DNA of 64,000 bases from Podarcis muralis (GCF_964188315.1 NC_135657.1:88412001-88476000), one strand, 5' to 3'. Counted from the first letter of the stretch, positions 6,375-44,885 are shown. The notes: generated from the sequence alone by a model not told the origin. Translations and numbers: made by a program.

Positions 6375-6376
6375 TT

Positions 6377-7318: not shown

Positions 7319-7440
7319 CTAATCATATGTAAACATTTATAGTTAAGAAGAGTAGTATCGCTTTCCAGTTCATCACATCTATATGTCTTTATACAAATAT
7401 TATTTACCACTATACCATTTTTTAAAAAATCAAATTAGTT

Positions 7441-7442
<2 letters not shown>

Positions 7443-7525
<83 letters not shown>
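7443..7525. repeat. Compound (CT)n(CA)n microsatellite
   Basis: Directly visible. Confidence 0.98.
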
Positions 7526-14320: not shown

Positions 14321-14608
14321 GGCATGGTTTAAATACGAGTAAAGTACTTGCATTATTTTGGTACCAGTCCATCTTCCGAGCCCTATTTCGTTTGAGAGTT
14401 CTGCTATCTCACTTTTTAAAAAATGTTCGCTCTAGTTTTTGGGTCTTAAATGAGAAATGGCAGGGCACAGTTTGATGATAAAGCAAGTGGGATGTGTGAC
14501 ATGATGAGATAATTCCTGGCCGTGTCCAGCCCATCTAGAATGGAATGCTTTTTGTTACGCTTACAAATATAGTCAGTAGTTGAAAATAACATCTTGTTCG
14601 TTTCTCAG

Positions 14609-25279: not shown

Positions 25280-26754
25280 GCAATCACATTGAGCAACTTC
25301 AGTCAACTTACGTTAGTTCTCATCAGTTCCAGCAAATGTCTAAGGACTTTCAGGCCTGGTTGGACAAAAAGAAGGAAGAACAGAATCAGCCTTGTCCCAT
25401 CTCTACCAAGCTGGAGTCTCTGTGGACATTAATTGATGATCAGAAAGAGTTCAAGGCTGCCTTGTCTGACCAGACTGGCTCTTATGAAAAAATCATTACA
25501 GAAGGTGAAAGTTTACTCCAGAAGACTCAGGGAGCGGAGAAGGCCGAGCTGCAGGCCCAACTGAACTTGCTCAGAGGTAACTGGGATGAAATGAACAAGC
25601 AAGTTAAAGAAAGGCAAGATAAATTAAATGATTGTTTGGAAAAAGCCCTTAGATACAGAGAGCATGTAGAAAACCTACAACCCTGGATAGCGAAATGCCA
25701 AAGCAATATCTCTCAAATAGAAATGAGCATAGATCCTGCTCGGCTAGAGAATTCCATCGCTCAGGTGAAGAGCTGGCAGAAGGACCTAGACAAACACCAA
25801 GGGTTGGTGGAGCTATTAAGTAATGCAGCTGAGACATTACTCAGTGCCTGTCAGACAGACAAAGACATTATTGAAGAGGAGAAGACACTGCTGATCCAGA
25901 ACATGGATATAGTCACAGAACAACTGCATGCTAAGAGAGATGGTCTGGAAAAGATGTCTCAGAGACTGAAAGAGTTTCAAGAGTCATCAAAAGATGTTGA
26001 AGAGCAGCTGAAGAATGCCAGAGAGCAGCTGGAAACACACAATTCTCTCAAACCCCAGACTTACAGTAACAAACACTTGACGATTATGCAGGCTCAGCAG
26101 AAAACACTCCAGGCCGTGAAGGCTCAAGTGGACCTTACAAAAAAGCTTGCCCAAGAACTGGTGGCAGATGCTTCAGATTCATCAGGTGTCTCTGACCTCT
26201 TGTTGCAGGCAGAAACGTTAGAAGAAGAATTCAGCACCATCAGTCAGCAGGTTGAAGATAAATGTTCATTCCTGGAGACTAAACTCCAGGGAATTGGCCA
26301 TTTCCAAAACAGCATCCGAGAGATGTTTTCTCAGTTTGCAGAGTTCGACGATGAATTGGACAGCATGGATTCTGTGGGTAGGGATCTTGTCACACTGCAG
26401 TCACAGCGAAAGGATATAAAAACTTTCCTGAAAAAGTTGGAGGAACTCATAACCAGTAATGAAAATGCAAATAATACCTGCAAAATGATGCTCGCAAATG
26501 AAGCTGAAGCTTCTCCAGATCTTGCAGGTATAAAACGGGACTTGGAGGCTTTAAATAAGCAGTGCAACAAGTTGCTAGACAGAGCAAAAGCCAGAGATGA
26601 ACAGATTGAAGGGACTATTAGCCGCGTTGAAGAGTTCTACAGTAAACTAAAGGGGTTTTCTAAACTGCTTGGGGAAGTTGAAGAGCATGAAGAGTCCCAG
26701 GGTTCTGTTGGAATGGAAATTGAGACGATAAATCAGCAGCTGAACGTATTTAAG
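25280..26754 (+). CDS. DST: Dystonin large 1475-nt rod exon (GNHIEQLQ...NQQLNVFK), phase 1-0
   Basis: tttgcag acceptor, AAG|gtaaga donor; several spectrin repeats ([23 protein letters not shown]). Confidence 0.96.
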
Positions 26755-27572
26755 GTAAGAAGGACCTTTCTGAGTTTTTAGAATTCTGTATTGTAAAATG
26801 AAAACTAACTGTAAGAATATTGTGACGTGAGCTCCTTAGTAGTCTAAACCCCCAAGGAAAAGTGATTGGGTTGGCCCTCCTTTTTCAGCTTATAGATCAT
26901 GTCTTGTAAGCCAGTCAGTTTCTTAAGAATTGTGTTCAAAGTCATTTTTTATGTTTCCCAACAGAGGGTGCTTTTTGCCTATTTTAAGACGAGTGAGAGC
27001 TAACATAACATACATCCCACCCAATGCATTCCCGTCTTGAGATCTAAAGCTTTATTAATAAGCAAGTTTTGTTTGTTTGTTTATGAATTCAAATGCCTCC
27101 TCTAATTTCAACGGAGAAACGGAATTGCTGCAAAATAGTTACATCATAACATTTTTATTTGCCTTGTAATGAATAAGACTTGAGTTGTCCAACAGGAAGT
27201 GATATCACATGCTCCTTTGGTTTGGAGGTCCTTGGAATTTACAAGTAATTTGTGGGTTGTGGTCTGAAGTTGTATGAAGTGTTCTCAGCTCAGTGTTCTC
27301 ATGAAGCAATTTAGAAACTGAGAAGACGGTCTTCTCTTTGGTCAAAAGTTATTAGAGAAGCATTCTTAAGTTGTTTTAAAACAGAATGTCCTGCATTTTG
27401 CTTTGAAGATCTCCAGCAAAGCTGAGCTTCTTGGGTTCTCCTCTCCTCCCCTCTTCCACAGCTGTCATGATTAATGGTAATTTTTAAATGGTAATTTAGT
27501 GCAAATACACTAAATCATGCTTCCATTCAAGCACGCAGAAGGGTTGTCAACTGCAGCTTTTGTTATTCAGAG

Positions 27573-27708
27573 CAAACTTTCCCAAACTTGGATCTCCAGC
27601 TATTGTTAAACTACAATTCCTATCGTCCCTGACCACCAGTCCTGCTAGCTAGAGATGATGGGAATTATAGTCCAACAACAGCTAGAGACCCAAGTTTGGG
27701 AAACACTG
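27573..27708. mobile_element. Palindromic hAT MITE
   Basis: tttcccaaacttgg ... ccaagtttgggaaacactg inverted ends; internal actacaattcc/ggaattatagt. Confidence 0.7.
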
Positions 27709-28974
27709 CCCTAGAGCTTAACTAACACCATTCAATTTACTTAAAAAGTTGGGGTTCTTTAAGAATCTTTATATTTGCTTCCCATTGTTGCTATACTGCC
27801 CGGCTGAGGAGGCTCAGTGCTTCTGTGGCAGGAGAGCCTTCTCATGAACAGATTGCTGAATGATGGGATAGAATGAGGGCAGAAGCAGCCCTGAACTTTC
27901 CCCACCTTCACACCCATTCAGAATATAGCCATAATCTTTCCCAGAGAGCAAGACAAAGCACAATGAACACAGCCTCCAGCATCCCACGCCCCAGAGGCAT
28001 TGCACAGGCACGCAGGAAGAAATAGATCCTGCTCTGAGTAGTGTGTTCATATCAAACAATTCCAAATAAAAGACAATGGGGAGAGGAACTGAAGAAGCTG
28101 CAATTCAACTGTCCTCTCTGACAGCTGGTGCTTATATATGTATTTGCGGCAGATATTTATTTCATTTACTACGTGCACCATATGAAGAGCCAGCCCTCCT
28201 GTGACAGAGTGAAGGTGAGGTCAAACAGAGTCCTGGGCGAGGTCCAAAAAGGCTGAGATTAGCTTTCATTCCTGGGGGTTGTCCCAAGAGTCATGACATG
28301 GGATCATGCCAGGCATTATGCAGCCAAGAGGTTTCATCCAAACCTGGTTCTCAGGATCAAGAAAAGTACTGATCAATTAGTCAGGGCAAAACAAAGAAGT
28401 GTGGAGGTGAGCTAAGGCAAAGGCAACAGGCCATTGGCTGTGCATTTGTTCTGCTGAAGCATAGTTCTGGTTTCTGTCTTGTAACCCCGGCCCTCATCCA
28501 AGAAAGCTGTCTGGCAGAATTTATTTTAATATCCAGTGTGCCTAAGATAAACTCAGTGGCTGAAAGCAAAAGAAACAATCCTGCCTTGGGCACTAGGTGC
28601 TAACTTCCATTCCATAATGAACTTTCATCTCCTAAGATGGCACAGAAGGGAAGCACAGCACTAGGTCCTCTTGCCTGCTAAACACCAGAATAAGCAGAAT
28701 AAAGGCATATAAAGGCCTGAGCAAATGAAACATTATTTACCTGGCATACAAAGAATAACAGAATGAGCCCTTCTGAACCAAAGATAGGGCTCCCCTGATG
28801 AAAAAGCCCTGTTTCAGGTTATCAGACAATAGTACCTGAAGAGATATAACAGTGGGCAGTGGAAGCAACCACTTTTTAAGGTACACTTGCTTCCAAGATG
28901 GGTTTTTTAAACTTGAAAGTCATAAAAAGTACTTAAAGGATTGCTTTTTCCTGTGTATTTCCTTCAGTGTGACC

Positions 28975-29270
28975 AAGCAACGTCAGAGGTCTTGCTTTGC
29001 ACCTCCCCAACAGCAGATATGCAGTGGGTGAGAACAATGCACAGGGCAATATCAGTTAGGGCACCAGTGCTCTGGACTGCCCTCCCCAGGAAAGCATGTC
29101 TGGACCCACCATTGTGTACATTTCACAAGCTCTTTAAGAGCTCTTTTGCAAACCCTTTGACTGAGGGTAGCTGATGGCTGTTAGCAGATCTCTCTGCTAC
29201 TGTGATGATAGTGGTTGTGCTACTACCATTTGTTTTTCTGTATTGTTTTACTGGCCTTTTTTTAAAAAAA
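28975..29270 (+). mobile_element. Old L2 3'-end fragment
   Basis: APVLWTALPRKACLDPPLCTFHKLFKSSF resembles L2 ORF2 C-terminus, followed by T-rich tail. Confidence 0.5.
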
Positions 29271-30529
29271 GAAATGTGACAGGCTTTCCTTGCCATATAA
29301 CAATGCAAGGTATCCCCCAGATAAATATGGGATGAACAGGCGTTTGAGAATTTCCTCTGTCTTTCTCCACCACATCCTTGAAAGGGGATCAATGATATCC
29401 CTGAGGAGCTGTAGTCTAAGCAATCTACTGGCCTGTTCAGGCTTTCTTTTTGTAATTTGCAGTAAGAATTGGAACAATTATGTTATCTTTTTGGGTAAAG
29501 TTTGTAATTATTACTTCATTTTATAAAGTATATGGATCAGTTAGAACAAGAGACAAAAAATAAAAGATGAAAAACAAAACTATAAAATAGTAATGTAGAA
29601 TGAGTTAAAATAACAAAGTAAAGACTTTCAACTTTACCAGATCATCTATAGTTGCAGATTTGCCAGGTTGTCTTGAAAATTATGGTGCCGCTGTATATGT
29701 CATAAAGCAATGCCAAATCATATCAAAAGTGTAAGATTTGGGCTGTTTTCTATTGAGTTGCAATTACTATTCATGCTGTCAAGATCATATATAAGACTAG
29801 TTCTTTTGACAATATATATTTACATTGGTATCATCAAAAATATTCAGTAACATTAATTTTGGACAACAAACAATATTTTCTTTAGTGATATTTATCATTT
29901 CTCTCAAAATTAAATTAAATTTTGCACCAACTGACATTCCCGCTATAAATGATAATATGTGCCAAGTTTATTGCAAACCCTCTAACAGTCAGGTGATATA
30001 GAATAAAATATTTTTGACATTTGCAAAGGCTTGCAACACCATCTGTGTAACATTTTTAAATTTTCCCTAAGGAAACCAGAAACAGATTTTTAGGGTCATG
30101 ATGCCCAAGTTTTATTCCAGTCCTTGGGAATAATTTGTGTGCCAATATCCAGTTCCCATATCTTTTTAAGGGGTGGCATAGATCCATAAGTTACATTGAG
30201 CAATGTAGAGTACAGTTTAGAAACTAATCCTTTCTCCCCTCTACCCATTGTGCTTAATAATTTTTCAGATGCTGTTAAGGGTCTTAGAGCTTGTGTTTTT
30301 ACATGTTCTTTTTAAAATAAAACTATGAAATTAATTAAAATAAACCCAGTTTGTGTTAAGTTAAGTCTTCTTTCTCTCTGACAGTTTTCACATTTTTTTC
30401 TTAATTTCACAAGTAAATGCTGCACTTTTTTGGTTTAGACTGCAACAAGCTCTTTCTGTGTCTGATTATGTTTTGGGAACTTCTGACTCGGAGAACTGGT
30501 GTTTCAATACGTGCGTGTGTATTGGGGTA

Positions 30530-30891
30530 AGGTAAAGGTAAAGGTACCCCTGCCCATACGGGCCAGTCTTGACAGACTCTAGGGTTGTGCGCCCATCTCA
30601 CTCTATAGGCCGGGGGCCAGCGCTGTCCGCAGACACTTCCGGGTCACGTGGCCAGCGTGACAAGCTGCATCTGGCGAGCCAGCGCAGCACACGGAACACC
30701 GTTTACCTTCCCGCTAGTAAGCGGTACCTATTTATCTACTTGCACCCGGGGGTGCTTTCGAACTGCTAGGTTGGCAGGCGCTGGGACCGAGCAACGGGAG
30801 CGCACCCCGCCGTGGGGATTCGAACCGCCGACCTTTCGATCGGCAAGTCCTAATCGCTGAGGCTTTAACCCACAGCACCACCCGCGTCCCC
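30530..30891 (-). mobile_element. Sauria SINE, full length, subfamily A
   Basis: Near-identical to 4516 and 58012; 14-bp TSD tgtgtattggggta. Confidence 0.92.
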
Positions 30892-30907
30892 TGTGTATTG
30901 GGGTACT

Positions 30908-31125
30908 GTATATTTATTTATTTATTTATTATTTGTTACATTGTATATCCCACCTTGCCTCCAAAGAGATCAAGGCAGCATAAAGCTTCCCCCCTCTCCA
31001 TTACCCTCACAACAGTCCTGTAGGCTAGGCTGAGAATTGGTGACTAGCCCAAGGTCACCCAGTGAGCTTCATGACCAAGTGGGGATTTGAAGCTTGTTCT
31101 CCCATGGCCTAGCATGACACTCTGA
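30908..31125 (-). mobile_element. tRNA-derived SINE with (TAAA)n tail (Squam3/MIR-like)
   Basis: (attt)n tail, tcccaccttgcctccaaag, cccaaggtcacccagtgagcttcatg. Confidence 0.55.
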
Positions 31126-32539
31126 TTTATTTGTTTATTTATGAAAATACTCAGCATGTTCATTCCATGTACATTTTATCTAGAACATCTTTGGGTTGTA
31201 TTCACTTAGTCATGCTTAGAGTAGACCCACTGGAAACGAGCAGGACTTAAATCATTTCTAAAGTCCTGTTGATTTCAATGGATCTACTCTAAGCACGACT
31301 AAGTCTGGATCCAATTTGCTTGGCAGAATGTGTTCATCACATGCAACAATGCATTTTGGCAACAGTCGCACACAGAGCTTCACAAATCCCTGTTGTTGGA
31401 CTACAAAGATTAGTCTATTTCTTTGTCTTTAGCATCCGATTCAGGTTATGTGAGGACAACTTGAATGGGTTTAATAGCACACTTCTGAAGGTCCTTTTGG
31501 AAGGACCTCTCTTTTTCTTGAAGATATGCACCTATGTTTGCAAGAAGAAGAAAAACAGAGCTTTGTATTATTATTTCTATGAACCATTCTGTGAATGGTT
31601 ACAATTGGGTGGGGGTGGGAACCAATGGCTAAAATGTTTTGATTAAATTGATCTTTTAATCTACTCCTTGATGATACCTGATGGGTACTTTTATATGTTT
31701 TACTACAAATACTGTGTGTTTAAAATTTTGTTTTCCCTCTCTGATTTTTTTTTTGGGGGGGGAGGGGGTTATTGGGTTGTTCTTGTGTTTATTTTGATTA
31801 TGTATTTTGCGTTTTTATATTGTGATTTTACCCTGTGAACCCCCTGAGACCTGTGGGTATAGGGCATTATATTAATTAATTAATTAATTAATTAATTTTA
31901 TTATTCCTGATAATCCGTATTATCTATTTTTATATATTTAAATGAGTTTTATACCATGCTTCATTTACAAAGAGGAATATGAAAAGTGGTTCACATTATC
32001 CACTTTATCCATTAATAAGCCAACAGTCAACCACAAAATTGTAGATTTTTCTCACAGTATATGCCTTTTGAGATGATGGTGTGGGCTTCTTTCAGACAGT
32101 GACCTGGTTTTCATGCCACACTAAGACAAACCATGTCTTAGTGCAAGTGTGCAGCTCCTGGAGAGGAGATAATGGTCATCTTGCTGCTCCTCAGTTGTTT
32201 TGCTGCTGCACCAGACTGAGCTAAGCCATGCCATCTTAACTTGGGCTTGTGGCATGTCTCTCTCCAGCATAATCATGATCTGTAACCAAGGTATTTCCTG
32301 TGGACGACCACCATTTGAGGCAGATACCTAGCTTTTTGGTCTCCATTCCTTGTTTTAGCAGTAGACTCCAGTGAGGGGTTGAGGGTATTGTCTATAAATG
32401 CACCATCTCCTGGGACACGCTATCAGAGGGTCTGCACCTGGTGCTTGGCCAAAGAAGCAGACTGGAGATGCTGCTGGTCTATCAACTACCCTGTTGCCCA
32501 GCAGCATGCCTGATCAAGCTGGTCAAGGTAGTCTCTGGA

Positions 32540-33055
32540 CTACTTCAATATCCATTAGAGGCTGCCACTGTACTGGCTGAGCTCAAGACTTAAGGCCTTC
32601 ATTACAACCATGCAGCTCTCTCAAATGGTCATTGGTCCAACACATCATTTAGGAGACACCCTTGATGTAGTCTTTGCCCCAAATGACCTGAGGGATGGAC
32701 TGAGGTTGGGTGTGGAAGTGCACTGCTTTGTCATGGTCCAATCATTTCCTGGTATAGTCCAGATTGGTAGCAACAATTTCCTGACTGGGAGCTGCCATTA
32801 GAAGTTTTGTGGCCAGGTACCATAAGTATGCTGGTGTCACTCAGCCATAACATCTGAATTAGGAACAATTGTGCATGCCTTGGAACAGTGCCTGGACCCA
32901 GTTTTAGCTTATTGTTTTTACTTGTTTTGAATGTTTTAAATATTCGTTTTTAGTGAATTTTTTTACTGTTATTGTTACTGGGTTATTCTTTTTGTAAACC
33001 GCTTGGAGGTTTTATTATAACCAACGGTATATAAATGTTGTGAAATAAACAAACG
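32540..33055 (+). mobile_element. Old L2 relic (endonuclease piece plus 3' tail)
   Basis: VIGPTHHLGDTLDVVF motif; tail ttgtaaaccgcttggagg..cggtatataaat. Confidence 0.55.
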
Positions 33056-34090
33056 AATATACATGATGTGCAAAGCAGACCACTAAGTAATAGTAAAGTA
33101 ACAAAGTTCAAGTGGTAGTCCCAAGCTCATTGGAGGAAGGGAATAGCAAATTGGAATTGTGACTAGTGACTCTGCTTTGAAATCATTACCAAGAACGGTG
33201 GTCCATAGGCATATATTTTTTACAATTAACAGCTGTCAGTCCACTTTTAACGAGTATTGCTTTTGGGTAGCTGAGAAGAAGATTGTCTGCTTGTAGTTCT
33301 TATATCTTATCTATCGGTATTTACATAGAGAAAAGAGGATTTTGTTTTGTATTCAGAAATCCTACCCAAGAACAAATCTTCCAGTGTTTCCAATCAAAGC
33401 TCCATTTTCAGTTACTTACAGTAGCTGGCATATTGTATTTCATGGTGTTTCTCTTTCATTCTCTCACTTTCATTCAGTTTTATTGTAGACCTTTGTGCTT
33501 TAAAGAAAGTACGCATTGAATGAACGTGGGCAAAAGAAAAATTCAGCAGATGAACTTGCTTTACTTGGGTTACACCATGCCCATTTCCTCACAAAGAGCC
33601 AACCAGCTAAGATGATCCTGAAAAACAAAAGCCCTTGTTTAGTTTGTATTTTGCTGAACATTTTAATGAGCTACTTCATGCTAGGGTGGGGTTGTGGGGA
33701 AGCAGCGTTCAATCTCTGCCACGTAATTACAATCCTCGAAATGTCTGCAAAATATTTCAGCCATAAACCTGCCACACTCTTTATTTATTCTTTTATTTAT
33801 TAAAGCACATGGATTTATGTCAGTTTCTATCACTGAATGGCTCATTAAATCCCCTCCCCCATTTAGACCATTACTAGATGCGGAAAGGGTCGTTTCAGTA
33901 TATTTCCACTGTTCAGATATATGTCAAGAGGTGCCTTCTAATTGCGCTTCATAGGAGATCTGGGCCCGGATGAATATTCCAGTTGATGAGCTTGAACTAA
34001 TATTTAAATTGGTTTATGTCGGTGTCGTAGATGGTGGCCTCTTACCTTGTTGATTGAATCAGTGTAGTGTGTTAACTTTTCCCTGAAGTA

Positions 34091-34446
34091 CAGTGGTGCC
34101 TCGCAAGACGAAATTAATTCGTTCCGCGAGTTTTGTTGTCTTGCGATTTTTTTCGTCTTGCGAAGCACGGTGTCGGAAAAGTTTTGGAAAAGCTTCAAAA
34201 ATCACCAAAGTCTTCAAAAACCTCAAAAAAGGCTACCACACTGCGTGCTATGAGTTGCTCCTCAAAGTCAAGTCGCAACTGTATTAACGGTGTTAAGAAA
34301 AAGGAAACAAACTTGCAAGATGTTTCCGTCTTGCGAAGCAAGCCCATAGGGAAAATCGTCTTGCGAAGCAGCTCAAAAAACAAAAAAACCCTTTCGTCTT
34401 GCGAGTTTTCCGTCTTGCGAGGCATTCGTCTTGCGAGGTACCACTG
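34091..34446. mobile_element. Tc1/mariner (Tigger-like) MITE with repeated CGTCTTGCGA motif
   Basis: TA|cagtggtgcctcgcaagacg ... cgtcttgcgaggtaccactg|TA. Confidence 0.88.
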
Positions 34447-35205
34447 TATGTGGTTTCTTTTCACAGGCGCCTTCAAAAGTAAAATTATATTTTGTCGCTG
34501 CATCAACTTCAATATTTGCATCCATTTTGCAGCTTAAATATAAAATGAAAAAAGAATAATAATTTATTATCACTACATTAAAGAAAAAACTCAGCATATA
34601 TTTGGGGTGGCTGTCTGCATACAGACCTTATCCTTTGTCCAGAGCCCTCTGTGTATTCTAATGCTCACATGGAGCTCCTTTACAGATGGTCTTCCCCATT
34701 CATTTAAATGGAAGGAGTAGCTGCGTGTGTCAGTTCAGGTGCTGCCTTGGACATGTACAGTGCCTGTTCAACAAATCCATGCTCAGCTGACTATAAATAC
34801 ATTCTGGGTTGGGAGTGACAGACCTCCTTCAAAGGAGGGTCTTAAGGTTCATTGTCATTCCAGTACTGACCCATTTTGCTTCTTGAAGCCCAGATAGCGT
34901 CTCCTGCCCCCCAACTAGAGCCACTGCTTTGAAAACACTTGCTGTACTTTACTTGGGAATATCCTTTGTGGCACACAATAAGATTTTCTTTGGAGTAGTG
35001 AATATGTATGGCAATGGACTGCCAGAAACTTCATTCCTGTCTGCGACTATCCCTTATAGTGCTGCCTTCCCAAGGGAGGGGAACTTTTTCTGCAGTAGTT
35101 TATTTATATGGTTTGTTGTGACTGCAGCTTGTGGTATGAAACATTGTCTTTTTAGTGGGACATGATTGTTGTTAACAACGTGGGCATTTTTATATGTAGA
35201 TATGC

Positions 35206-35455
35206 CTGCCAACCTAGCAGTTCGAAAGCACTCCCGGGTGCAAGTAGATAAATAGGGACCGCTTACTAGCGGGAAGGTAAACGGCGTTTCCGTGTGCAGC
35301 TCTGGCTCGCCAGAGCAGCAATTTCACGCTGGCCACGTGACCCGGAAGTGTCTCCGGACAGCGCTGGCCCCCAGCCTCTTGAGTGAGATTGGCGCACAAC
35401 CCTAGAGTCTGTCAAGACTGGCCCGTACGGGCAGGGGTACCTTTACCTTTACCTT
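35206..35455 (+). mobile_element. 5'-truncated Sauria SINE, subfamily A
   Basis: Begins mid-element at ctgccaacctagcag, (ACCTTT)n tail, TSD tatgc. Confidence 0.88.
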
Positions 35456-36299
35456 TATGCTGGTATACATATGGCAAATAAATTAACAATCCACCAGCCT
35501 TTAGAAATGAGCTGCTCTCCTTGCTCTGTATTATTTTTACTCTTTTTAGTGCTTTAGCTATTTATTTTATTGCAAATCTAATATGCCTTCCATCTGAATA
35601 GATCCAGAAACAAATAAGTAAAACTACTCATGCTATTACCTCAATATAGTGTGGTTTTTAGGAGTACTGTATTGGGTGAGATTTTTGAAAAGTTGCAGCA
35701 CTTCTTTGCATGTTAGGATTTGCAGTTGTCTGAGAGCCAGGAAGTGTAAAAAAATATCAAGCAAATCCCTTTTCATTGGATTAACTGGATTGTGAATGAA
35801 GAATGCATTCTGTAGTCATTCAGAGAGACCAATTTGCCGGCTAAATCCCTAATTATAGAATATAATGTACATGTGTTACAAATATAGAGCAAAGGATGCA
35901 ATCCTATGGAGATTTTTCATGGGGCTTGCTCAGAAGTAAGATCTGGCTGTTAATTAAAATTGATTTATGGTGATGGTGGAAAGTAATTCAATTTGATTGA
36001 ATTCTTATTATACAGCTGGTTAGTTTAGTTTATAATGCTACATACCATTAAAAGTGACCATCCACTATATTCAGATTCCTGTTAATCTGCATAATTTGTA
36101 AGTACTGGATTATTCTTTTTGTTATGAAGCAGAATAAGTGCAGTTTGTCAGTGTTTTAGAAGGGTCCTGGGTAGTCTGGTCCATATTTGTATGGTGTCAG
36201 GTTACCCGGTTAAGCAATATGTACTAAATTTTTGACATTTTGAACTAATTAGCACCGGTTTTTCCATTCTGCTTGTGAGCCACCACCCACCCACCCACC

Positions 36300-37110
36300 C
36301 ACCCTCTTTTCCTCCAGAATTAGAGAGCACAGACTCCGAGATGCAGGAGTGCTGCAGACAGGAACTTGCTCCTTTGTGCACCTCCCCCTGAAAAGGCTCA
36401 GCCGCGTTCAGAGACAAGACAAACAGTAAAAGTGAAAGATGGCTAAGTAAAGTCATGTGGGGCAGGAAGCGTAAGGGGGAAGAGCTAAGAGGTCAGGCAC
36501 CTCCTAATGCTCGGTTGGAATAATACTCAGGGAACGAATGCGATAGGAGCAGATGTTGCCTAAAGAATAGCAAAGGGCGTTTCTTTTAAGCTCACTATTG
36601 GGAGGGATGCCTGTCAGACCATAAGAAACCAGGGAGAGCCGGAAAGCTTATCAGCTGCGCTGGGCAGGACATGTGAGCGTTTATTGTTGTGAGCTCTTTT
36701 TAATGCCTTCTTCGCTACAGCTGCGCTTCAAGACGGAGATGAAAACAGTGACCACGCTCTTGTAGCCACCGTTTATACAAAAAAAAAGTCCTGCTGAATT
36801 TAAACAGAATGTGAATCTGTTGTGCCTTTGTGCCGGAGTGGAGGAAGAAACGCTCTAGTTTCCTGCTGTGTTGCCTTAAAACAGGACAACTTTCAAGGAA
36901 TGTGTTCTGCGAGTGAAACTGGGAGAAAAGTTTCTTTTTCTACTAATTCTGTTCCGTTGCTTTTTTGTACTATTATTATTTCATTGGTCTGGCTCCTCAG
37001 AAAACTGTTGTGTTTCCCATGGAACTTCTGAACGCGCCGCAGAGAAGCTTTAAGGAAGCAAGGAATAAACTGCCTTTTGAATCGAGGTTATTTATAGCTG
37101 CTGCCAAAAA
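36300..37110 (+). promoter_or_regulatory. Candidate internal promoter or enhancer upstream of the KIAA0754-like exon
   Basis: Non-repeat DNA with roughly two dozen CpGs in about 750 bp (by eye), twin CAGCTGCGCT E-box motifs (36652, 36718), MEF2-consensus TTATTTATAG (37088-37097). Confidence 0.4.
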
Positions 37111-37844
37111 AGGGGGAAAGCTTCTGCTTTTATTATTATTATTATTACAACTCTGGATGTACCTTTGTTTTTCCTGAAGCCTTTCTCTGTGCCTTGGTCT
37201 CCACAGTCCACAGCTCTTCTGGTTTGTTTTTCTTCAAAAGCGTCCACAACATGGCTTATTTATAAAGGAGATGGAATTCTGCAAGCCATTTAAATGGATT
37301 ACAGTTAATCTGTCACCTCCTGAATATAGTGTGCTGCCTGCTATAATGCTGATTCATTTTGAAGACTTAATCTGGAGATTTAAGACACACATTTTGACCT
37401 AAAAATTGAAATGGAATGCTATGTGGGAAGTTCTGAGTCTTTTGAGCCACTTAAAGATTTTCCTGGGGTTTGGGGGTTTGTACATTTTGTTGGTGTCTTT
37501 GTGCGTTGAGTTAGTATTTTAAAATATTAAAAGGTGTGGGGTTTTTTTGTTTCCCCTCTCCCCACCCCCTTCAGCTCAAGCACTTTATATTTTAGGGGCA
37601 AGGGGAGAAATGTTTTAAATCACAGCCAGGTAAACTTACACAGATGCACTGATTACGACCTTAACCGCCTCATAAATTATTTCCTGTGTTTTAGTATGTA
37701 AGCATCTTTCTGCTGAGGGCAAGTTTACTGTACTTTTTAAAAACTGCTTTTCTATTACTTTATTTTAAATTTTACTTTATGTGTGTTGCGTGTCTCCAAT
37801 AAGGTAGCCTAGCAGCAGTGCTAGATCTGTTAATTCCTGCAGAA

Positions 37845-39143
37845 ATGGGGAAGCCGCTGAGCAGGCCAGACTGTTTACGCCAGAATCCTCCTTGTGTAGG
37901 AAAAGGTGATGAAGAAGAAGAGGATATAAATATTGAGGACTGTTATGTTCCCCAGAGGTCAATCTATGACACAGTGCGGCTGAATGAACAGATTGACTCA
38001 GGTTCTAAAGGCAGCCTCTCCTCCAGGCATTTCTCAGATCGGACTTTGCCGTATAGTCATAGAACACTGGACCTTAGTACATTGTGCTCCAATGGTGCCC
38101 TCTCCTCCTCTAGTGTCTTTGAACTCAGAGGACGGGAAGCCAATAAGCTAGATGAAAAAATGATCTTTGATGCCCTTAAGCTGAACAGTGACATCATTCG
38201 AACAGCTGGCTTGCCCAAAGCAAAGTATCACACAGAAAAGAAAGAACATAGGAGGTCCTGGAGGATGCTTGTCCCACCAAATTTTGCAGACTATGCAAAT
38301 AAAAGTGAGTGCTCACTTGCTGGGACTGTTGATGTGTCCGACTTAGCAGCAACAGGCCAGGTCAAATGTGGGACCAGTTCTCTAACTTCCGAAGAAGATG
38401 ACTCTGGTCTGTGCAGTCCTCCAGCAGAAAGAGAAGAAAAACAAGATGTGCTAGAAGGGGAACAAACTCAGTTTAGGAGCATATCTTCCATAGACGATAA
38501 TCAGTTCATAGGTAAATTTGGATCATTTTCTCCTACCATTTCTAGTAGTGAACATCAAATTTCATTGCTTACCTCCAGAAGTGCCCCTACCAGTGGACAC
38601 TGTCGAGTAAAATTGCAGAATGCTTCACATATAGAGCAAGAATCTTTCTGGAACTATGAGGGCAACCAAGGGGAAGGAGATGGACATTGCAGTCCACTGA
38701 CATATTTGAAAGAAGACCTCTTAGCACATCCAGCATGGCTCCAGGATGGTGAGAGGGAACATGATTTCACTTTAGACAAAGAGGAAGTGAGGAACAGCGC
38801 TGAAGTTAATGAGCCATTAGACACCCAAGACAGGATGATTGAAAAGGACCTCCTGGATATTGCAACTCAGGATATAGATATTTATGATGATGATGATGAT
38901 GATGATGCAGCTTTACATGCTAGTGATACGGACTTAGTAAAATATGTGATTTTGCATGAAACTGAGGAAAGTAATATGGCCCATACAAGTGCAATAGAAT
39001 TGTCCTGTCAGGCTTTAGAGGCTAATAATACCACATGCTGTCAAAAAGCAAATCCAATCAGCGCTGAATTCAGCTTTTGGACTACAGGCATGCAAATAGA
39101 ACAAACCTTGGATACAGTGTGCAATGGCATGTTGTCTTATAAG
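37845..39143 (+). CDS. DST: Putative alternative first coding exon of DST, KIAA0754-like, 433 codons, phase-0 donor
   Basis: Stop-free non-repeat ORF; ATG in gcagaaATGG context; AAG|gtaatt donor at 39143/4 in phase with exon 43244; N-terminus MGKPLSRPDCLRQNP..IEDCYVPQRSIYDTVRLNEQID resembles recalled KIAA0754 N-terminus. Confidence 0.8.
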
Positions 39144-40520
39144 GTAATTCCAAACTTAAATGCATTCTTTTCATGCTGCAGGGTGGGTTATTTTTTATTT
39201 TATAATTTTTTCTTCTGTAATTGCATCATGAATGCTTATGTTTAGATTTTGCTAATCTACCCAAAGAGCTCCTTTAGAATCATTTGCCCAACAAGTTATT
39301 AGAAGGCAGAAATTGGCGAGATGGTCACTTCAGTAAATTGATTAAGGGCAGTTTGTGACAGGGTTGATTGCTTCCAGCTGTTTGGTTGCATGGCTATTTA
39401 TTGTCCAGATGGTGCCTGTTACCCTTTATTTGGAATGCTTCCACCAGGCATTGATGTTCAGCACCCCCTCCTCCCCTCCCCTCAAATTATGTTTCAAGCA
39501 GCCAATGCCATTCAAGGGCAGATAGGCCTTCCCTATTCAGATTTAACCAGATTTCAGCTGCAGCCATATACTGTACACACTTTCATGGGAGTAAGGCCCA
39601 TTAAACCCAACGGGCATGCTTCTTCTGAGCTGACAAGTATAGGATTGCACTGTTCATCATAAAGGTATACACAACGATGCTCAGATTGCTGCGGTTTCCA
39701 AAGTACACAGATTAAAGGCTTGTTGCACGTACTGAAATTATTTCCTTGCATCTTCATGCCAAAAAGTAGTCCTAAAGTTGTAGGGGATTTTTTACAAGAG
39801 ATCTTGTAACATTTACTGAGCGGTGAATGAAGTAAGGAAGTAGAAAACAGCTTTGTAATAAGCATGGGGAGCTTGTGAAGTCTTTAATTTAATTTTGTTC
39901 TTTTTGTTTTTGGTCACTCTGATCTGGTTGTGTCTTGAGTTATTTTAGGAGTTGTTGCTAAGCTGTTCTGGCAAACTCTAGCCTCAATTCCTACTTTTGT
40001 GAGTGGGTATGTGTATCTAAACAACAAATCAAGGGGAACAACTCGGTTTGGATTGCTATGGAATTGTCTTAAAAATATATGAACATCTGAAATAGAGGAG
40101 AGTTGGATTGAAGGACCGCGTTACTAGTTCCATGGGCCTAAACTGGAGCAGGACTTGTGTTTCTCACACAGCAACCTCAAACACAGGAAGCTTCTTTTGA
40201 AAGAGAGGGGAATTTCAAAAGTAGTTTATGGAACCTGGGGTGTGTACATGTGCCTGCCTGTTTGATTGCCAAAGATACTACTGAGCTAACACTTGGGTAT
40301 GTGTAAATTAGCTTTTACATCCCAGCCCTTGTTTATTTCTCTAAAGTAAAGAGAACTTGCCCATATTATATATTATTTTGTGGGAAAGGTAAGACATGTT
40401 TGCTGTTTTCAACTACTTGGTTCCTCAGAACTCTGCTTTATAATGTCCCCCCCCCCCCCAACAAATCCCACAATGTCCTGCAAATAGGTAGTGCTATTGA
40501 GTGCAGCAAAAACAGCATTA

Positions 40521-40524
<4 letters not shown>

Positions 40525-40559
<35 letters not shown>
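40525..40559. repeat. (TG)n microsatellite
   Basis: Directly visible. Confidence 0.97.
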
Positions 40560-40560
<1 letters not shown>

Positions 40561-42019
40561 CCTGGTTGCTACTATGTAACACACCACCGTGTCTGAGGAT
40601 TATTGCATGTAGTCTCAAACGTGTGTGGGCTGCCCATGTTCGGACTTAAGTTCCTCACTGCCTCTGCAAAACCCCCTTCTCCCGGTTATTCGAGTGGATT
40701 TAAGGCCTCGAGGAGAGATGGGTCATACACTGTCCTGTGTGTCAAATGTGCTTGCTGTGTGTTGAAGTGCTGGCTGCTGTTATGACGTAAACCTAGGTGT
40801 GAAAATGTGCTGTTTGCAGACTATCCTAGAAAATCTGGGTTTCTTACACAATGTGCATAGCAAGTTTCTTTTTTCCTACTAGTGTTGTGCTTGGCCATTT
40901 TGGTGTACAATTTATGTATCCCATCTTGGGGAGGCTTCTTATCATTTTTGTTTTCAATTATGTGAGCATAAAAATTACTTAGGGCTGATATTGAGGTACA
41001 TCAACTATAAACATGCTTTATTTTCAGACTGTTCTAGGAATTTGGGTGTCCTGGGCTCCTTGAGTGTCTAGCTCCTAGGTTCTGAGGAATAACTTTAGCC
41101 ATACTGAGGTACACTTGTAGTATCCCCATAACATTGCTTGTATTAAGGGAATGATGTTACTAGTGGCAGCTGAAATAGATATTCAGGATGTGAGCCATAT
41201 TTGCTAGTAAAGCTATAATAATAAAGCTCAGTACAGTATTGCAGTACAATGGCTTCACAATATTTTGCTGACTATAGTGAAATTGCTGCCAAGGGACAGT
41301 GTCTGTAGTAGCAGTAGAAGAAGAAAAAGAAGATTTTTTGGGGGGGGGAGGGGAGGGAGTACTTAAAAGGTAAGAAGCTTTAAGACCACAGTTTGTATAT
41401 CCTGGGTTCATAACCCACCAAAAGCATTTGATGCCTGTGGAATATTTTCTGTCACTAGCCTTTGCAAGTTCTCAAATGAACATCACTTAGGTTGGTGGAT
41501 TGAGTTAACCTGCATTATGATATCATTATGTGAAGCATGCTTGAATTTCTTGCCAATGAAGACCGCCTGGGAAATAAAGGGACATGGTCCCCACTGTTTT
41601 TCAGTATCTTCTAAAACAATATAACCATTACTAGTCTTATCTAGAAGGTGAATGCTGGTGTGAATGCTCATCCTCCCAGGCCATTCCTGAGGTCCAGGCT
41701 CACCATGCTATAGTGGCCCCCAAATCGTTGGATAGCGCTTGCATTTCTCCACTGTGCAGTTAGGACTGGGGCAGGTCCCTTCCTGCATGTGCCCAGCATC
41801 TCACTGCTCACTTGGTCTGTAGGAGCCACACTGTCCAACACCAGCTCCTCCCATTAGAATTAAGAGCACTGCATCATTTTTAAATGACTATGCAAATCAT
41901 TATGCACCACAGAAACATATGTTGAGCATATTCAGACGATTGATTAATTTCCTCACCAAACTTTAAGCATTTCCCTTGTCCACCGTTACTACTCGTACTT
42001 TCAAACTCTACTATATAGA

Positions 42020-42730
42020 CTCTGGGCACTGTGTATTTGGTCTTTCAGAAAGGGTTTGACAAAGTACTTCACCAAAGACTCCTTAGTAAGCTTAATCGTG
42101 GAATAAAAGGAGAGGTCCTCCTACTGTTCTACAAATAATTAATTAACTAATTAAGGAACAGGAAGCAGACAGCAGGAATAAATGGGCAGTTCTCCCAATT
42201 AAGAGATCAGCATTGGGACATGGGCTTTTAAACTTGATTATAAATTATAAAAGTGAGCAATATAGTAGCTGAGGTTGCTGATGGTACCAAGTGGTTCAGG
42301 GTGGTTAAAACAAAAAGAGATTGCAAGGAGATCCAAAGTGATCTATCCAAATTGGCTGAATCATACTAGAACCCAGGACCATAGTATGAAGCTAAATGTT
42401 GGGAGATTCAGGACAGAACTTAAGAAAGAACTTCTTCATGCAGTGAATAGTTTTAACTTTGACAAAGAAGTAGTGGTGACCATTACTGTGATTGGCTTCA
42501 AAAAAGAATTAGACAAATTGATTGAAGATAGAGCTGTCAATGGCTGCTAGCTATGATGGCTATGCTCTCTCTGTTGGAAGAAGTATGCTTCTGTACGCCA
42601 GAGTCACAAGTCCTTTTTGCACTCAAGTCCTGCTTTCAAGCTTCCCACAGGCATCTGGTTGGCCACTGTGAGAACAAGATGTTGGTCTAGATGGGCATTT
42701 GGCGTGATCCATCAGGGCTCTTATGTTTTT
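42020..42730 (+). mobile_element. CR1 LINE 3' relic with internal deletions
   Basis: tttcagaaagggtttgacaaagt (FQKAFDKV-like), TRTQDHSMKLNVGRFRTE, CR1-type 3' UTR ending ctcttatgtttttatg. Confidence 0.75.
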
Positions 42731-43243
42731 ATGGGCTACTTGTGTCTGCTGGCCATATGCAAAGGATAACTGTTTGCACAGAGTTGCATGGCCCCAAGAA
42801 GAATGGGCTATTGTGAACAGATATCTGAACAATTACTATCCACAATATGTCATCCTCTTCAGTTTGACATAGGTGTCCACAACGTGTACCTTTTGCTTTA
42901 AATATTGTTTGAGCATCTATATTAGGAAGATTCAGTATGGAGCACTATGTTTGTCTCTTCCTTCTAAATACAGTGTTTGTTTTTTTATGTAATAGCAGTT
43001 TCTTAACTCCTGTTTGGGTTAATGTGTATATAATTTACTCTGAGTTGTTTTGTGTTTACAACATTAAGAGCAATTTGACATGTACACTCTGTAGCTAAAT
43101 ACTGTCTTTCCACACTATGTTCATGACATGCTGTGTGATTTTACTACTGATACCTGCTCTGGTCGTCACTTATGCTCAGCATGTTCCAGACTTAATAATC
43201 TAAATGTGCCTTTGCCTTTCTTTCTTTTCCTTTTGATCTGAAG

Positions 43244-43405
43244 GTATTCGAGAAGGAAAAGGTTGAACCACTGCAGCTTAAGCAACAGGAGGTAAATTGG
43301 TTGGGTCAAGGCCTTATTCAGAGTGCTGCTAAAAATGCTAGTACTGAGAACCTTGAGCGTGATCTTGAGGATGTTAACACAAGATGGAAAACTCTCAACA
43401 AAAAG
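43244..43405 (+). CDS. DST: Dystonin exon ([11 protein letters not shown]...WKTLNKK), phase 0-0
   Basis: long pyrimidine tract then aag acceptor, AAG|gtacgc donor; [13 protein letters not shown]. Confidence 0.94.
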
Positions 43406-43799
43406 GTACGCTAGTTGTATTTGCACTCTTGTTTACCTTTCTAGTCTGCTGCTGTTTTTGTTTTGCTCTTATTTCTGATTTTCACTACAAAGTAGTACTA
43501 CACATTATTGTAGTAGACTGCATAATAAAATGCACAAAATCCCCAGTCCAGAACTCCATGTGTGCTCTGGTGCTCATGTAGAGCTCCTACAGAAGCAGAC
43601 TACCCTTTGTCACATGGGTACCCTGTCATTTTAATGTCTATGGAAAGAAACCTGTAGAAAGTCAAAAGCCTAAAGGAAATAGAGGATTGCAAAACATAAT
43701 TCATGGTGCTTTCTGTGTCATGCTGATTGAAGCAAAATGCCTACTCAACTGTCTTCAGCCCTATTTAGGGAAGTTTTTAATAACTGATGCTTTAATGCA

Positions 43800-44231: not shown

Positions 44232-44402
44232 GTTGCCCAAAGAGCAGCTCAGTTGCAAGAGGCACTGCTCCACTGTGGGAGGTTTCAAGATGCTGTCGAA
44301 TCTATCCTTAGCTGGCTTATTGACACAGAAGACCTTGTGGCTAATCAGAAGCCTCCATCTGCTGAGTTCAAAGTTGTGAAGGCCCAAATACAGGAACAGA
44401 AA
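44232..44402 (+). CDS. DST: Dystonin exon ([20 protein letters not shown]...QIQEQK), phase 0-0
   Basis: ttgttag acceptor, AAA|gtgagt donor; RAAQ/GRFQ/SAEFK residues as recalled for DST rather than MACF1. Confidence 0.95.
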
Positions 44403-44885
44403 GTGAGTGGAAGTTATTTATCTATCTTTAGATTAATTATATTTTCTCTGTAACCTGCTCAGTGGGGTATTTTAAACTGTTTTCAAAGCTGTGTTTTAAT
44501 GTTGTAACCCACCCGGGGCCTTAGGATGAATAGTGGGTAATTAATAACAGTAATAACATGTGGTGGCCTGGATAACAGTGTGGCTGAGTATGTATTAGAC
44601 ATGTGCTATAAGAGGTGCAGTTGCAAAAGAACTTGAAAAAAATACATCTCCATAGTCTCTGTGATCCCATCACTTAGGATGGTTGTCATGGATGCTCCTG
44701 GGGGGGGGGGTGTTTGGCTTTTTTCAGGGGAAGGTCAAATTTTCTCAACCCAATCTGTGAAATTCTCTTTAAAGATTTGCCCTTTCCTACTTTCATTTTG
44801 GAATTCTCCACTCATTTTAACAGAGGCATCCAGACTGTAGCATATTAGTGGCACAGGATCTATTAGTCCTGCCTTTTACTTGTAT

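What the first reader, a model, noticed from the sequence alone, without database searches (positions are those of the whole stretch)
37845..39143. Hidden KIAA0754-like first exon predicting a short dystonin without the actin-binding head
Seen: a 433-codon non-spectrin, non-transposon ORF in the intron between rod exons 26754 and 43244, ending at an AAG|GTAATT donor in phase 0, matching the downstream exon. It cannot be an internal cassette, because both nearby acceptors give stops when read from the upstream phase-0 exon (GTA GCC TAG; AAA TGG GGA AGC CGC TGA). It therefore behaves as a first coding exon. Recalled, to be verified: KIAA0754 starts MGKPLSRPDCLR..IEDCYVPQRSIYDT and lies inside MACF1, I believe in the equivalent intron, which would make this module older than the DST/MACF1 duplication. 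Established: spectraplakin C-termini carry EF-hand and GAR microtubule-binding domains (outside this window). Inference: a little-studied isoform class with a new N-terminus, the distal spectrin repeats and a microtubule anchor, but no actin-binding or plakin domains.
Basis: partly seen in the sequence, partly recalled or inferred. Interest (0 to 1): 0.9.

Follow-up and report, generated by a model that had tools for sequence, protein, structure and literature searches.

The report
Known alternative start exon of dystonin
The 433-codon reading frame is real and strongly conserved: it is the lizard copy of an internal start exon that gives a short dystonin with no actin-binding or plakin part, already present in public gene models and noted in a 2017 review but never studied functionally.

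Summary
Window 37845-39143 (+) is an open 433-codon frame from ATG to AAG|GTAATT, in phase with the next rod exon (43244-43406). The flanking exons are dystonin. The exon is under purifying selection (dN/dS 0.03-0.11 for residues 1-160). Its donor is conserved in five sauropsids, and protein similarity stops exactly at that donor. Mammalian RNA assemblies from four public runs give about 10 kb mRNAs. Each has a 1 kb GC-rich leader collinear with the genome, then this exon joined to the same downstream exon, then at least 14 spectrin repeats, EF-hands and a GAR domain. They have no CH, plakin or plectin domains. KIAA0754-type MACF1 proteins and a hagfish protein carry the same N-terminal module, joined at the same exon boundary. 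A tree separates a dystonin clade from the MACF1-type sequences.

It is not hidden or new. Ensembl/UniProt and GenBank list 2.4-2.7 thousand-residue "Dystonin" proteins that start this way, in mammals, a bird, turtles, snakes and a lizard. A 2017 spectraplakin review mentions the extra conserved exon. Function is unstudied. I infer a lipid-anchored, disordered head, but did not test it.

The parts
36400..37100 (+). Weak CpG-enriched, slightly GC-richer stretch: candidate promoter and transcription start of the short isoform (inferred)
   Evidence: CpG observed/expected is 0.64-0.80 here, against 0.30 for the window and 0-0.2 in the flanks. GC is 0.44-0.52. In mammals the mRNA leader starts in a strong CpG island at the equivalent distance from the ATG.
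36170..37844 (+). Conserved block upstream of the ATG: putative promoter plus long 5' untranslated part of the first exon (inferred for this species)
   Evidence: One continuous blastn block begins at 36167 (Elgaria) or 36188 (Pogona) and runs on through the exon. Turtle matches 36381-37452 at 75% over 1087 nt and again from 37636. A bird matches 37065-37109 and 37238-37405. Mammalian mRNA leaders match 37037-37095 and 37182-37378, collinearly.
37845..39143 (+). Coding part of the alternative first exon of dystonin, 433 codons
   Evidence: tblastn of short-dystonin proteins P0280, P0300 and P0297 starts here and continues only downstream.
37845..37895 (+). MGKPLSRPDCLRQNPPC: candidate N-myristoylation (Gly2, Ser6) and palmitoylation (Cys10, Cys17) signature
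   Evidence: M1 G2 K3 P4 L5 S6 P8 C10 C17 are invariant in 34 dystonin, MACF1, teleost-paralogue and hagfish sequences. The lipidation itself is inferred, not tested.
37845..38324 (+). Conserved N-terminal module (residues 1-160), shared with KIAA0754/MACF1. Motifs: EDCYVPQRSIYDT-R-NEQID, KLDE--IFDALKL, RRSW--F-PP
   Evidence: dN/dS is 0.027-0.112 against four sauropsids. Alignment A1. AlphaFold2 gives mean pLDDT 52.6, with only two short helices, 40-51 and 104-112.
38325..39143 (+). Faster-evolving, dystonin-specific remainder of the exon. It includes SLTSEEDDSGLCSP, a species-specific poly-Asp run, and the conserved end LDTVCNG-LS-K
   Evidence: dN/dS is 0.27-0.50, and all indels are multiples of three.
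39144..39149 (+). Splice donor GTAATT, phase 0
   Evidence: AAG|GTAAT is conserved in the window, Elgaria, Pogona, Emydura and Pogoniulus. Protein similarity among relatives ends exactly here.
39144..39245 (+). Read-through tail (33 codons and a stop). It is intron in the spliced form and is not conserved as protein
   Evidence: The tails differ in length and sequence in every species. In libraries guessed to be RNA that hold 0.70-0.96 of the exon words, 39160-40000 is held at no more than 0.28.
43244..43406 (+). Second exon of the short isoform, shared with the long isoforms (54 codons, part of a spectrin repeat)
   Evidence: The junction module|VF(E/Q)KE is seen in mammalian mRNA contigs and in many gene models.
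44232..44405 (+). Third exon ([18 protein letters not shown]...). Further rod exons follow collinearly, at about 46886, 47434, 47801, 53346, 54165, 57426, 58943, 60612, 61845 and 62171
   Evidence: tblastn of P0280, P0300 and P0297. Boundaries are approximate.
25342..26754 (+). Large rod exon of the long dystonin isoforms, upstream of the nested exon. It is not part of the short isoform
   Evidence: Named relatives are dystonin or dystonin-like only. Short-isoform proteins give only weak paralogous spectrin matches here.

Best explanation
This is the lizard orthologue of an ancient alternative first exon of the dystonin gene (DST). The exon sits in a rod-domain intron. It most likely has its own promoter about 0.75-1.45 kb upstream of the ATG. 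Transcription would start there and run through a long untranslated leader and 433 codons, then splice from AAG|GTAATT (39143) to the rod exon at 43244 and on to the 3' end of the gene. By orthologues, the product is a dystonin of about 2.4-2.7 thousand residues. It has a largely disordered N-terminal head, the distal spectrin repeats (at least 14), two EF-hands, the GAR microtubule-binding domain and the C-tail. It has no calponin-homology, plakin or plectin-repeat domains. Shown here: the orthology, the purifying selection, the conserved donor, the same junction in mammalian mRNAs and in many gene models, and the shared origin with the KIAA0754/MACF1 module. Inferred: the head is N-myristoylated on Gly2 and perhaps palmitoylated on Cys10/Cys17, so the isoform would tie a membrane, rather than actin, to microtubules. 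The conserved helices and motifs (residues 30-54, 101-113, 136-146) would then act as docking sites for partners. Use of the junction and the position of the start site in this particular species are also inferred.
For: Identity of the gene: the flanking exon hits only dystonin-named proteins. In Elgaria, Pogona, Emydura and Pogoniulus the orthologous frame lies on the same strand inside a 7.8-7.9 thousand-residue CH-plakin-plectin-spectrin gene. Conservation: 195 homologues from shark to human. dN/dS is 0.03-0.11 for residues 1-160 and 0.27-0.50 for the rest, and the donor is conserved. RNA: Logan contigs L002, L003 and L004 come from three runs and are 9.9-10.1 kb. They carry a 1.02-1.09 kb leader and an intron-free 8073-nt frame of 2690 residues. 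Poly(A) tails are present in L003 and L004. L005 comes from a fourth run. The junction is ...CNGFQLVQ|IFQKEEIEPLQ. The leader is collinear with a genomic-type contig and begins in a CpG island with GC 0.64-0.82 and CpG o/e about 1. Architecture: spectrin x14, EF-hand, GAS2, and no CH or plakin. Mapping on the window: exon 1, then 43244, then 44232 and so on, with nothing upstream. Annotated full-length relatives named Dystonin occur in Suricata, Rhinolophus, Sus, Balaenoptera, Haliaeetus, Pelusios, Gopherus, Pseudonaja and Phrynosoma. Paralogue: KIAA0754 homologue, E 1e-50. Fish MACF1 models of 3.1-3.4 thousand residues and a hagfish protein join at the same boundary. Tree. This species: the upstream block is conserved to turtle, bird and mammal, and CpG is enriched at 36400-37100. 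Twelve small libraries guessed to be RNA hold 0.70-0.96 of the exon words, but the 841 nt after the donor is held at 0-0.28. Probable DNA runs hold 0.98-1.00 of that stretch. Lipidation signature: G2, S6, C10 and C17 are invariant in 34 sequences. The head is predicted to be disordered.
Against: No read or transcript of this species was examined. The libraries are only guessed to be RNA, and exon-capture DNA would give a similar contrast. NCBI annotates the orthologous frame in several reptiles, a bird and the elephant as a separate 'uncharacterized protein LOC' that reads through the donor. Intron sequence is conserved at the nucleotide level for 300-850 nt beyond the donor, so an unspliced product may exist as well. 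Lys at position 3 violates the PROSITE myristoylation pattern as I recall it, although NCS-family proteins beginning MGKQNS or MGKSNS are myristoylated (my own knowledge). No lipidation or localisation data exist. The CpG enrichment in the lizard is weak.
Confidence: 0.85

Rival explanations
1. It is an independent nested single-exon gene, as KIAA0754 was first catalogued. The transcript would ignore the donor, be translated to the stop at 39243-39245 (466 residues) and end in the intron, giving a small protein with no spectrin, EF-hand or GAR part. This could coexist with the spliced isoform.
For: NCBI models 'uncharacterized protein LOC...' of 434-487 residues exist in Elgaria, Pogona, Emydura, Pogoniulus and elephant. 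The human cDNA FLJ26213 contains the exon without spectrin sequence. Nucleotide conservation continues to about 39470, and again at 39657-39987, in turtle and Pogona. AATAAA/ATTAAA signals lie at 39600 and 39711. Some libraries guessed to be RNA hold 0.08-0.28 of 39160-40000. The 2017 review leaves 'its own isoform' open.
Against: The read-through tails are unrelated in sequence and vary in length (2 to over 50 residues), while protein similarity ends exactly at a conserved GT donor. The human cDNA diverges after about residue 310 into unrelated sequence, so it is not a clean witness. No RNA-type library holds the 55-68% of 39160-40000 that use of the 39600/39711 signals would predict. One library that holds 0.90 of the exon holds 0.00 of that stretch. 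Full spliced mRNAs exist in mammals.
Confidence: 0.1
2. It is an internal cassette or 'poison' exon of the long dystonin transcripts. It would be spliced in from exon 26754 through the AG at 37842 or 37804, ending the long reading frame early or allowing re-initiation at the ATG.
For: AG dinucleotides with a pyrimidine-rich run precede the ATG in this window.
Against: Both acceptors give immediate stops from the phase-0 upstream exon. The AG at 37842 is absent in Elgaria, Pogona, turtle, bird and mammals. Mammalian mRNA leaders contain no rod-exon sequence and are collinear with the genome back to a CpG island. Conservation of the protein starts at Met1.
Confidence: 0.03
3. It is a chance open frame or a decaying relic with no present function in this lizard.
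For: None beyond the lack of direct expression data for this species.
Against: The 433-codon frame is intact, with only in-frame indels. dN/dS is 0.16-0.39 overall and 0.03-0.11 in the head. Homologues reach E 1e-225. Exon words are present in many small libraries of the same species that lack the adjacent intron.
Confidence: 0.02

Closest known systems
Annotated short 'Dystonin' proteins beginning MGKPLSRPDCL, for example UniProt A0A673V0K5 (Suricata, 2674 aa), A0A670YVC8 (Pseudonaja, 2613 aa), A0A480TTF5 (pig, 2680 aa), 'dystonin-like' of Haliaeetus (2687 aa) and Phrynosoma platyrhinos JD844_023976 (2428 aa)
   Same: Same first exon, same junction to the VF(E/Q)KE exon and same downstream exons. 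They map collinearly on this window. The window groups with the Phrynosoma, Elgaria and Pseudonaja sequences at 100/100 support.
   Different: Nothing of substance: this is the orthologue in another lizard. Differences are species-level, such as a poly-Asp run in this lizard. Only the first 13 or so exons lie inside the window.
KIAA0754 / 'MACF1, isoforms 6/7' (name as given by NCBI and UniRef sources) and fish or tetrapod MACF1 models of 3.1-3.4 thousand residues
   Same: A homologous N-terminal module of about 160 residues (52% identity, E 1e-50), with the same invariant G2, S6, C10, C17 and the QRSIYDT, LDE-IFDALKL and RRSW motifs. The position in the gene and the splice boundary are the same. 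The downstream architecture is the same: spectrin repeats, EF-hands, GAS2.
   Different: It is the paralogue, in a separate clade. The MACF1 exon is much longer (about 1090-1140 residues before the junction, against 411-433 in dystonin), and the part after residue 170 is unrelated.
Dystonin-a3/b3 N-terminus with a putative myristoylation motif (PMC6975176; bioRxiv 10.1101/122010)
   Same: An alternative promoter gives a dystonin with a predicted lipid-anchored N-terminus.
   Different: That leader lies at the 5' end of the gene. It is followed by one CH domain, the plakin domain and the whole rod. The exon studied here lies deep in the rod region and removes all of these. No sequence relation was seen in any search.
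Drosophila Shot D-type isoforms and other spectraplakin isoforms lacking the actin-binding domain (bioRxiv 10.1101/122010)
   Same: The same principle: internal or alternative starts give spectraplakins without the actin-binding head.
   Different: Those are different exons, and no homologue of this module was found outside vertebrates among 1.84 billion representatives. [quoted passage not shown] The mRNAs show this to be incomplete.

Membership tests
Spectraplakin internal start exon (KIAA0754 / MACF1 isoforms 6/7 type) | N-terminal module beginning MGKPLSRPDCLRQNP, with the EDCYVPQRSIYDT, KLDE-IFDALKL and RRSW motifs | tested here: met
   52% identity to a KIAA0754 homologue over 170 residues, and 26 invariant columns in 34 sequences.
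Spectraplakin internal start exon (KIAA0754 / MACF1 isoforms 6/7 type) | Lies in the rod-region intron immediately upstream of the exon that begins (V/A)F(Q/E)KE...NWLGQGLI | tested here: met
   the same boundary in 28 dystonin, MACF1 and hagfish proteins, and the window exon at 43244 is that exon.
Spectraplakin internal start exon (KIAA0754 / MACF1 isoforms 6/7 type) | Spliced from its phase-0 donor to the downstream rod exons in mature mRNA | tested here: inconclusive
   Met in mammals (mRNA contigs). In this species the donor and phase are right, and exon words are held without the adjacent intron in RNA-type libraries. No reads could be laid.
Spectraplakin internal start exon (KIAA0754 / MACF1 isoforms 6/7 type) | Own promoter, so that it is a first exon and not a cassette | tested here: inconclusive
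   In mammals the leader is collinear with the genome and starts in a CpG island. In the window there is a conserved upstream block and weak CpG enrichment, with no conserved acceptor. No 5'-end data are available for this species.
Dystonin (DST) rather than MACF1 | Flanking exons and the module itself group with dystonin orthologues | tested here: met
   only dystonin names, 55-81% identity; dystonin clade at 99/98 support including the window; nested in the giant CH-plakin-plectin-spectrin gene in four sauropsids.
N-myristoylated proteins (NMT substrates) | Gly at position 2 after the initiator Met, and Ser/Thr at position 6 | tested here: met
   MGKPLS is invariant in all 34 sequences.
N-myristoylated proteins (NMT substrates) | Myristate actually attached, and membrane association lost in a G2A mutant | not testable with these tools
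   No experiment or predictor is available. Lys3 is outside the PROSITE pattern as I recall it, but it occurs in myristoylated NCS proteins (my own knowledge).
Independent nested protein-coding gene | A conserved C-terminus and stop of its own, and a 3' end in the intron | tested here: not met
   The tails after the donor are unrelated in sequence and length. No library holds the stretch up to the first poly(A) signals. 3'-end data were not available.

The most novel reading that the evidence does not exclude
The head may be a doubly lipidated, intrinsically disordered membrane anchor that has been kept since the vertebrate ancestor in both dystonin and MACF1. If so, vertebrates make a separate class of spectraplakin from an internal CpG-island promoter, one that links a membrane compartment directly to microtubules without touching actin or intermediate filaments. 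Such isoforms would escape N-terminal DST and MACF1 mutations and be hit by C-terminal ones. They could therefore account for part of the allele-dependent spectrum of dystonin and MACF1 disease.
Probability: 0.4. Interest if true: 0.55.

Novelty: already known. Interest (0 to 1): 0.3.

Why it matters
This settles what the exon is in this genome: a bona fide alternative start of dystonin, not a stray frame and not a separate gene. Annotation pipelines disagree on it. NCBI calls it an 'uncharacterized LOC' nested in dystonin in several reptiles and birds, whereas Ensembl and UniProt list it as Dystonin. The disease-oriented isoform catalogue lists only the e, a1-3 and b1-3 forms. A head of about 160 residues with dN/dS near 0.05, kept from hagfish to mammals in both paralogues, has never been studied. 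That makes it a reasonable target for cell biologists and for interpreting DST and MACF1 variants. It is not a discovery of a new kind of element.

Tried and rejected
1. Laying RNA reads of this species over 37600-43500.
2. Pfam on the exon found no family. PF27015, seen in a relative, is a spectrin-type family (SR_desmoplakin_3) and not the head.
3. The ESM Atlas search on the flanking exon returned only generic spectrin clusters, so it was no use for telling dystonin from MACF1.
4. AlphaFold2 on a 34-sequence alignment of the head gave mean pLDDT 52.6 and pTM 0.17. No fold search was worth running.
5. The Logan contigs of a ruminant read-through form (L010-L015) break at SINE repeats. I cannot tell whether they are DNA or pre-mRNA, so I did not use them as evidence for an unspliced mRNA. 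L010 served only as a genomic-type reference.
6. P0123 turned out to be a genome gene model, not RNA.
7. Literature searches: no paper holds the peptide MGKPLSRPDCL. None holds both KIAA0754 and dystonin. The KIAA0754 plus MACF1 papers are association lists. The 'internal promoter' and 'short isoform' searches gave nothing specific except the 2017 review.
8. No protein in hand spans the long-isoform junction from 26754 to 43244.
9. I considered a second structure job on the exon-1 tail plus the first repeats and dropped it, because that tail is not conserved between tetrapod and teleost dystonin.

Full report
**Observation.**
- It opens at the ATG at 37845, in the context GAAATGG, and runs 433 codons to AAG at 39141-39143. 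GTAATT follows.
- If the donor is ignored, 33 more codons lead to a stop at 39243-39245.
- An in-frame TAA lies at 37800.
- The rod exon upstream ends TTT AAG|gtaag at 26754.
- The exon downstream runs from 43244 to 43406 and encodes 54 residues, in phase 0 at both ends.
- Pfam finds nothing in the 433 residues.

**Which gene.** The large exon at 25342-26754 finds 74 relatives. Every one that carries a name is dystonin or dystonin-like, from a sandgrouse, a pangolin and two JGI entries. None is MACF1. In Elgaria, Pogona, the turtle Emydura and the bird Pogoniulus, the orthologous frame lies on the same strand inside a gene whose product has 7837-7965 residues with CH, plakin, plectin and spectrin domains. 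The window is therefore part of the rod region of dystonin.

**Is the frame a gene part?**
- A search of 5.8 billion proteins gave 195 hits. Identity is 79% to Elgaria and 66-71% to Pogona and a boa. It is about 60% to a turtle and to birds, and 52-55% to mammals. Partial matches come from sturgeon, whale shark and a characin.
- Pairwise codon analysis against four sauropsids gives dN/dS of 0.16-0.39 for the whole exon. The value is 0.027-0.112 for residues 1-160 and 0.27-0.50 for residues 161-433.
- All indels are in frame, and the donor AAG|GTAAT is kept in all five species.
- Among relatives that read through the donor, the tails are unrelated in sequence and range from 2 to more than 50 residues. 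Similarity ends exactly at the donor, and the first tail residue is nearly always Val, which is the GT of the donor.

**Is it spliced to the rod, and is it a first exon?** A search by region for long proteins with this head returned 72 proteins of 1.9-3.4 thousand residues.
- About thirty are dystonin-type. Most of them are named Dystonin and have 2.1-2.75 thousand residues. They come from meerkat, horseshoe bat, pig, blue whale, beaver, a titi monkey, a sea eagle, two turtles, the brown snake, the lizard Phrynosoma and several teleosts.
- Three are Logan assemblies. P0297 is encoded on contigs from three separate runs. Each contig is 9.9-10.1 kb, with a 1.02-1.09 kb leader and an uninterrupted frame of 8073 nt. 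Two have poly(A) tails. P0285 comes from a fourth run.
- A frame of this length that crosses dozens of exon boundaries without introns can only be mRNA.
- These mRNAs show the junction ...CNGFQLVQ|IFQKEEIEPLQ, which is head exon to the orthologue of the window exon at 43244.
- Their domain content is at least 14 spectrin repeats, an EF-hand pair and a GAS2 (GAR) domain. There is no CH, plakin or plectin domain.
- The leader contains no spectrin-coding sequence. It aligns collinearly with a genomic-type ruminant contig back to a CpG island (GC 0.64-0.82, CpG observed/expected about 1) that lies 0.9-1.5 kb upstream of the ATG. The alignment stops at the end of the head exon. In mammals, then, the exon is a true first exon with its own CpG-island promoter.
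- Mapped on the window, the Phrynosoma, Pseudonaja and mRNA-derived proteins begin at 37845 and continue at 43244 and 44232. They then run on through 46886, 47434, 47801, 53346, 54165, 57426, 58943, 60612, 61845 and 62171. Upstream they give only weak paralogous spectrin matches.
- The AG just before the ATG, a possible acceptor, is present only in this lizard and one relative. It is absent from Elgaria, Pogona, turtle, bird and mammals.

**This species.** I could not look at reads. The indirect evidence is as follows.
- A conserved block starts at 36167-36381 and runs to the ATG in Elgaria, Pogona and the turtle (75% over 1087 nt in the turtle, higher than in the coding part). Shorter matches occur in a bird and in the mammalian mRNA leaders.
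- CpG observed/expected is 0.64-0.80 at 36400-37100, against 0.30 for the window and near zero in the flanks.
- Twelve small libraries of the same species from three studies, guessed by the tool to be RNA, hold 0.70-0.96 of the exon's sampled words.
- For the 841 nt that follow the donor, the best such library holds 0.28 and most hold under 0.2. One library that held 0.90 of the exon holds 0.00. Probable DNA runs hold 0.98-1.00.
- This contrast fits splicing at 39143. It does not fit a dominant transcript that runs to the first poly(A) signals at 39600 and 39711.
- Exon-capture DNA libraries could give a similar picture, so I count this as suggestive only.

**Relation to KIAA0754 and MACF1.**
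- A hyena 'KIAA0754 homolog' shares 52% identity over the first 170 residues (E 1e-50), with the recalled start and the QRSIYDT motif.
- Fish, frog, bird, snake and marsupial MACF1 models of 3.1-3.4 thousand residues start with the same head and then carry spectrin repeats, EF-hands and GAS2.
- In 28 dystonin, MACF1 and hagfish proteins, the head joins the same exon, the one beginning (V/A)F(Q/E)KE and containing N-(W/A/G)-x-GQGLI. The MACF1 head exon is about 1090-1140 residues long, against 411-433 in dystonin.
- A maximum-likelihood tree of the head gives a dystonin clade (99/98 support) running from whale shark through sturgeon and teleosts to tetrapods, and it includes the window. The MACF1-type sequences cover the same range of species outside that clade. 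Hagfish sits on a long branch next to the dystonin clade.
- No relative outside vertebrates appeared among 1.84 billion representatives.

**What the head may do.**
- Twenty-six positions are invariant across 34 sequences of both paralogues, a third teleost paralogue and hagfish. They include M1, G2, K3, P4, L5, S6, P8, C10, C17, the run P36-T43, and S138 and W139.
- AlphaFold2 on this alignment predicts a mostly disordered chain (mean pLDDT 52.6, pTM 0.17) with two short helices at 40-51 and 104-112.
- Gly2 with Ser6 is the core of the N-myristoylation signal. Lys at position 3 is outside the PROSITE pattern as I recall it, but it is found in myristoylated neuronal calcium sensors (my own knowledge).
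- Two invariant cysteines nearby could take palmitate.
- My reading is a lipid-anchored, disordered head with conserved docking motifs, placed in front of the microtubule-binding half of dystonin. This is inference and has not been tested.

**What is already known.**
- The isoform is present under the name Dystonin in Ensembl/UniProt and GenBank for many species.
- The MACF1 counterpart is named 'isoforms 6/7' by the sources.
[quoted passage not shown] I take this to be the same exon. The description fits, but the figure itself is not held.
- No paper in the library contains the peptide or links KIAA0754 to dystonin.
- A 2020 review of dystonin isoforms and disease lists only e, a1-3 and b1-3.
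- Annotation is inconsistent. NCBI gives the frame as a separate uncharacterised gene nested in dystonin in several sauropsids and the elephant.

**Verdict.** The exon is the orthologue of a catalogued, though unstudied, start exon. It is a useful annotation point and a fair lead for functional work, but not a new finding.

Noticed in passing
window 38884-38904: A (GAT)7 run encodes seven aspartates inside the exon. Elgaria, Pogona, turtle and bird have Y-(E/A)-(D/N) here with a four-residue gap, so this is a species-specific in-frame microsatellite expansion in coding sequence.
   Followed up: partly
window 33141-34082: A deep-intron block about 4 kb upstream of the ATG is conserved at 76% over 965 nt with Elgaria, 73% with Pogona, and 77% over 132 nt with a turtle. 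It has no coding-like frame and no match to the mammalian mRNA leader. It is a candidate enhancer for the internal promoter.
   Followed up: no
window 39144-39473 and 39657-39987: Intron sequence just after the donor is conserved at about 70% with turtle and Pogona, although the read-through peptide is not conserved. It may be a splicing or termination control region, or the 3' end of a minor unspliced transcript.
   Followed up: partly
L006-L009 (Elgaria, Pogona, Emydura, Pogoniulus), positions 6001-7464: NCBI annotates the orthologous exon as a separate 'uncharacterized protein LOC' that reads through the donor, nested in the giant dystonin gene. Ensembl and UniProt list the spliced short form as Dystonin in other species. 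The public annotations conflict.
   Followed up: yes
proteins P0154, P0157, P0158, P0162 (teleosts; 'si:ch73-305o9.3'): A third teleost group carries a diverged head (MGKPLSRPGCFRQS...). It forms its own clade at 100/100 support among the MACF1-type sequences, probably a teleost-specific MACF1 duplicate.
   Followed up: partly
window 51090-52760, minus strand: A tandem array with a period of about 239 nt shows up as a ladder of near-identical 74- and 97-residue frames.
   Followed up: no
window 6314-7303 (-) and 13851-14372 (-): Intronic transposon remains: a 329-residue reverse-transcriptase-like frame, and a 173-residue frame with a GIY-YIG-like motif typical of Penelope-like elements.
   Followed up: no
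protein P0013 (Limosa) and P0260 (Crotalus): Gene-model oddities. The godwit model joins the head exon to the third exon and skips the VFEKE exon. The rattlesnake MACF1 model has 120 extra residues before MGKPLS. These are probably prediction artefacts.
   Followed up: no
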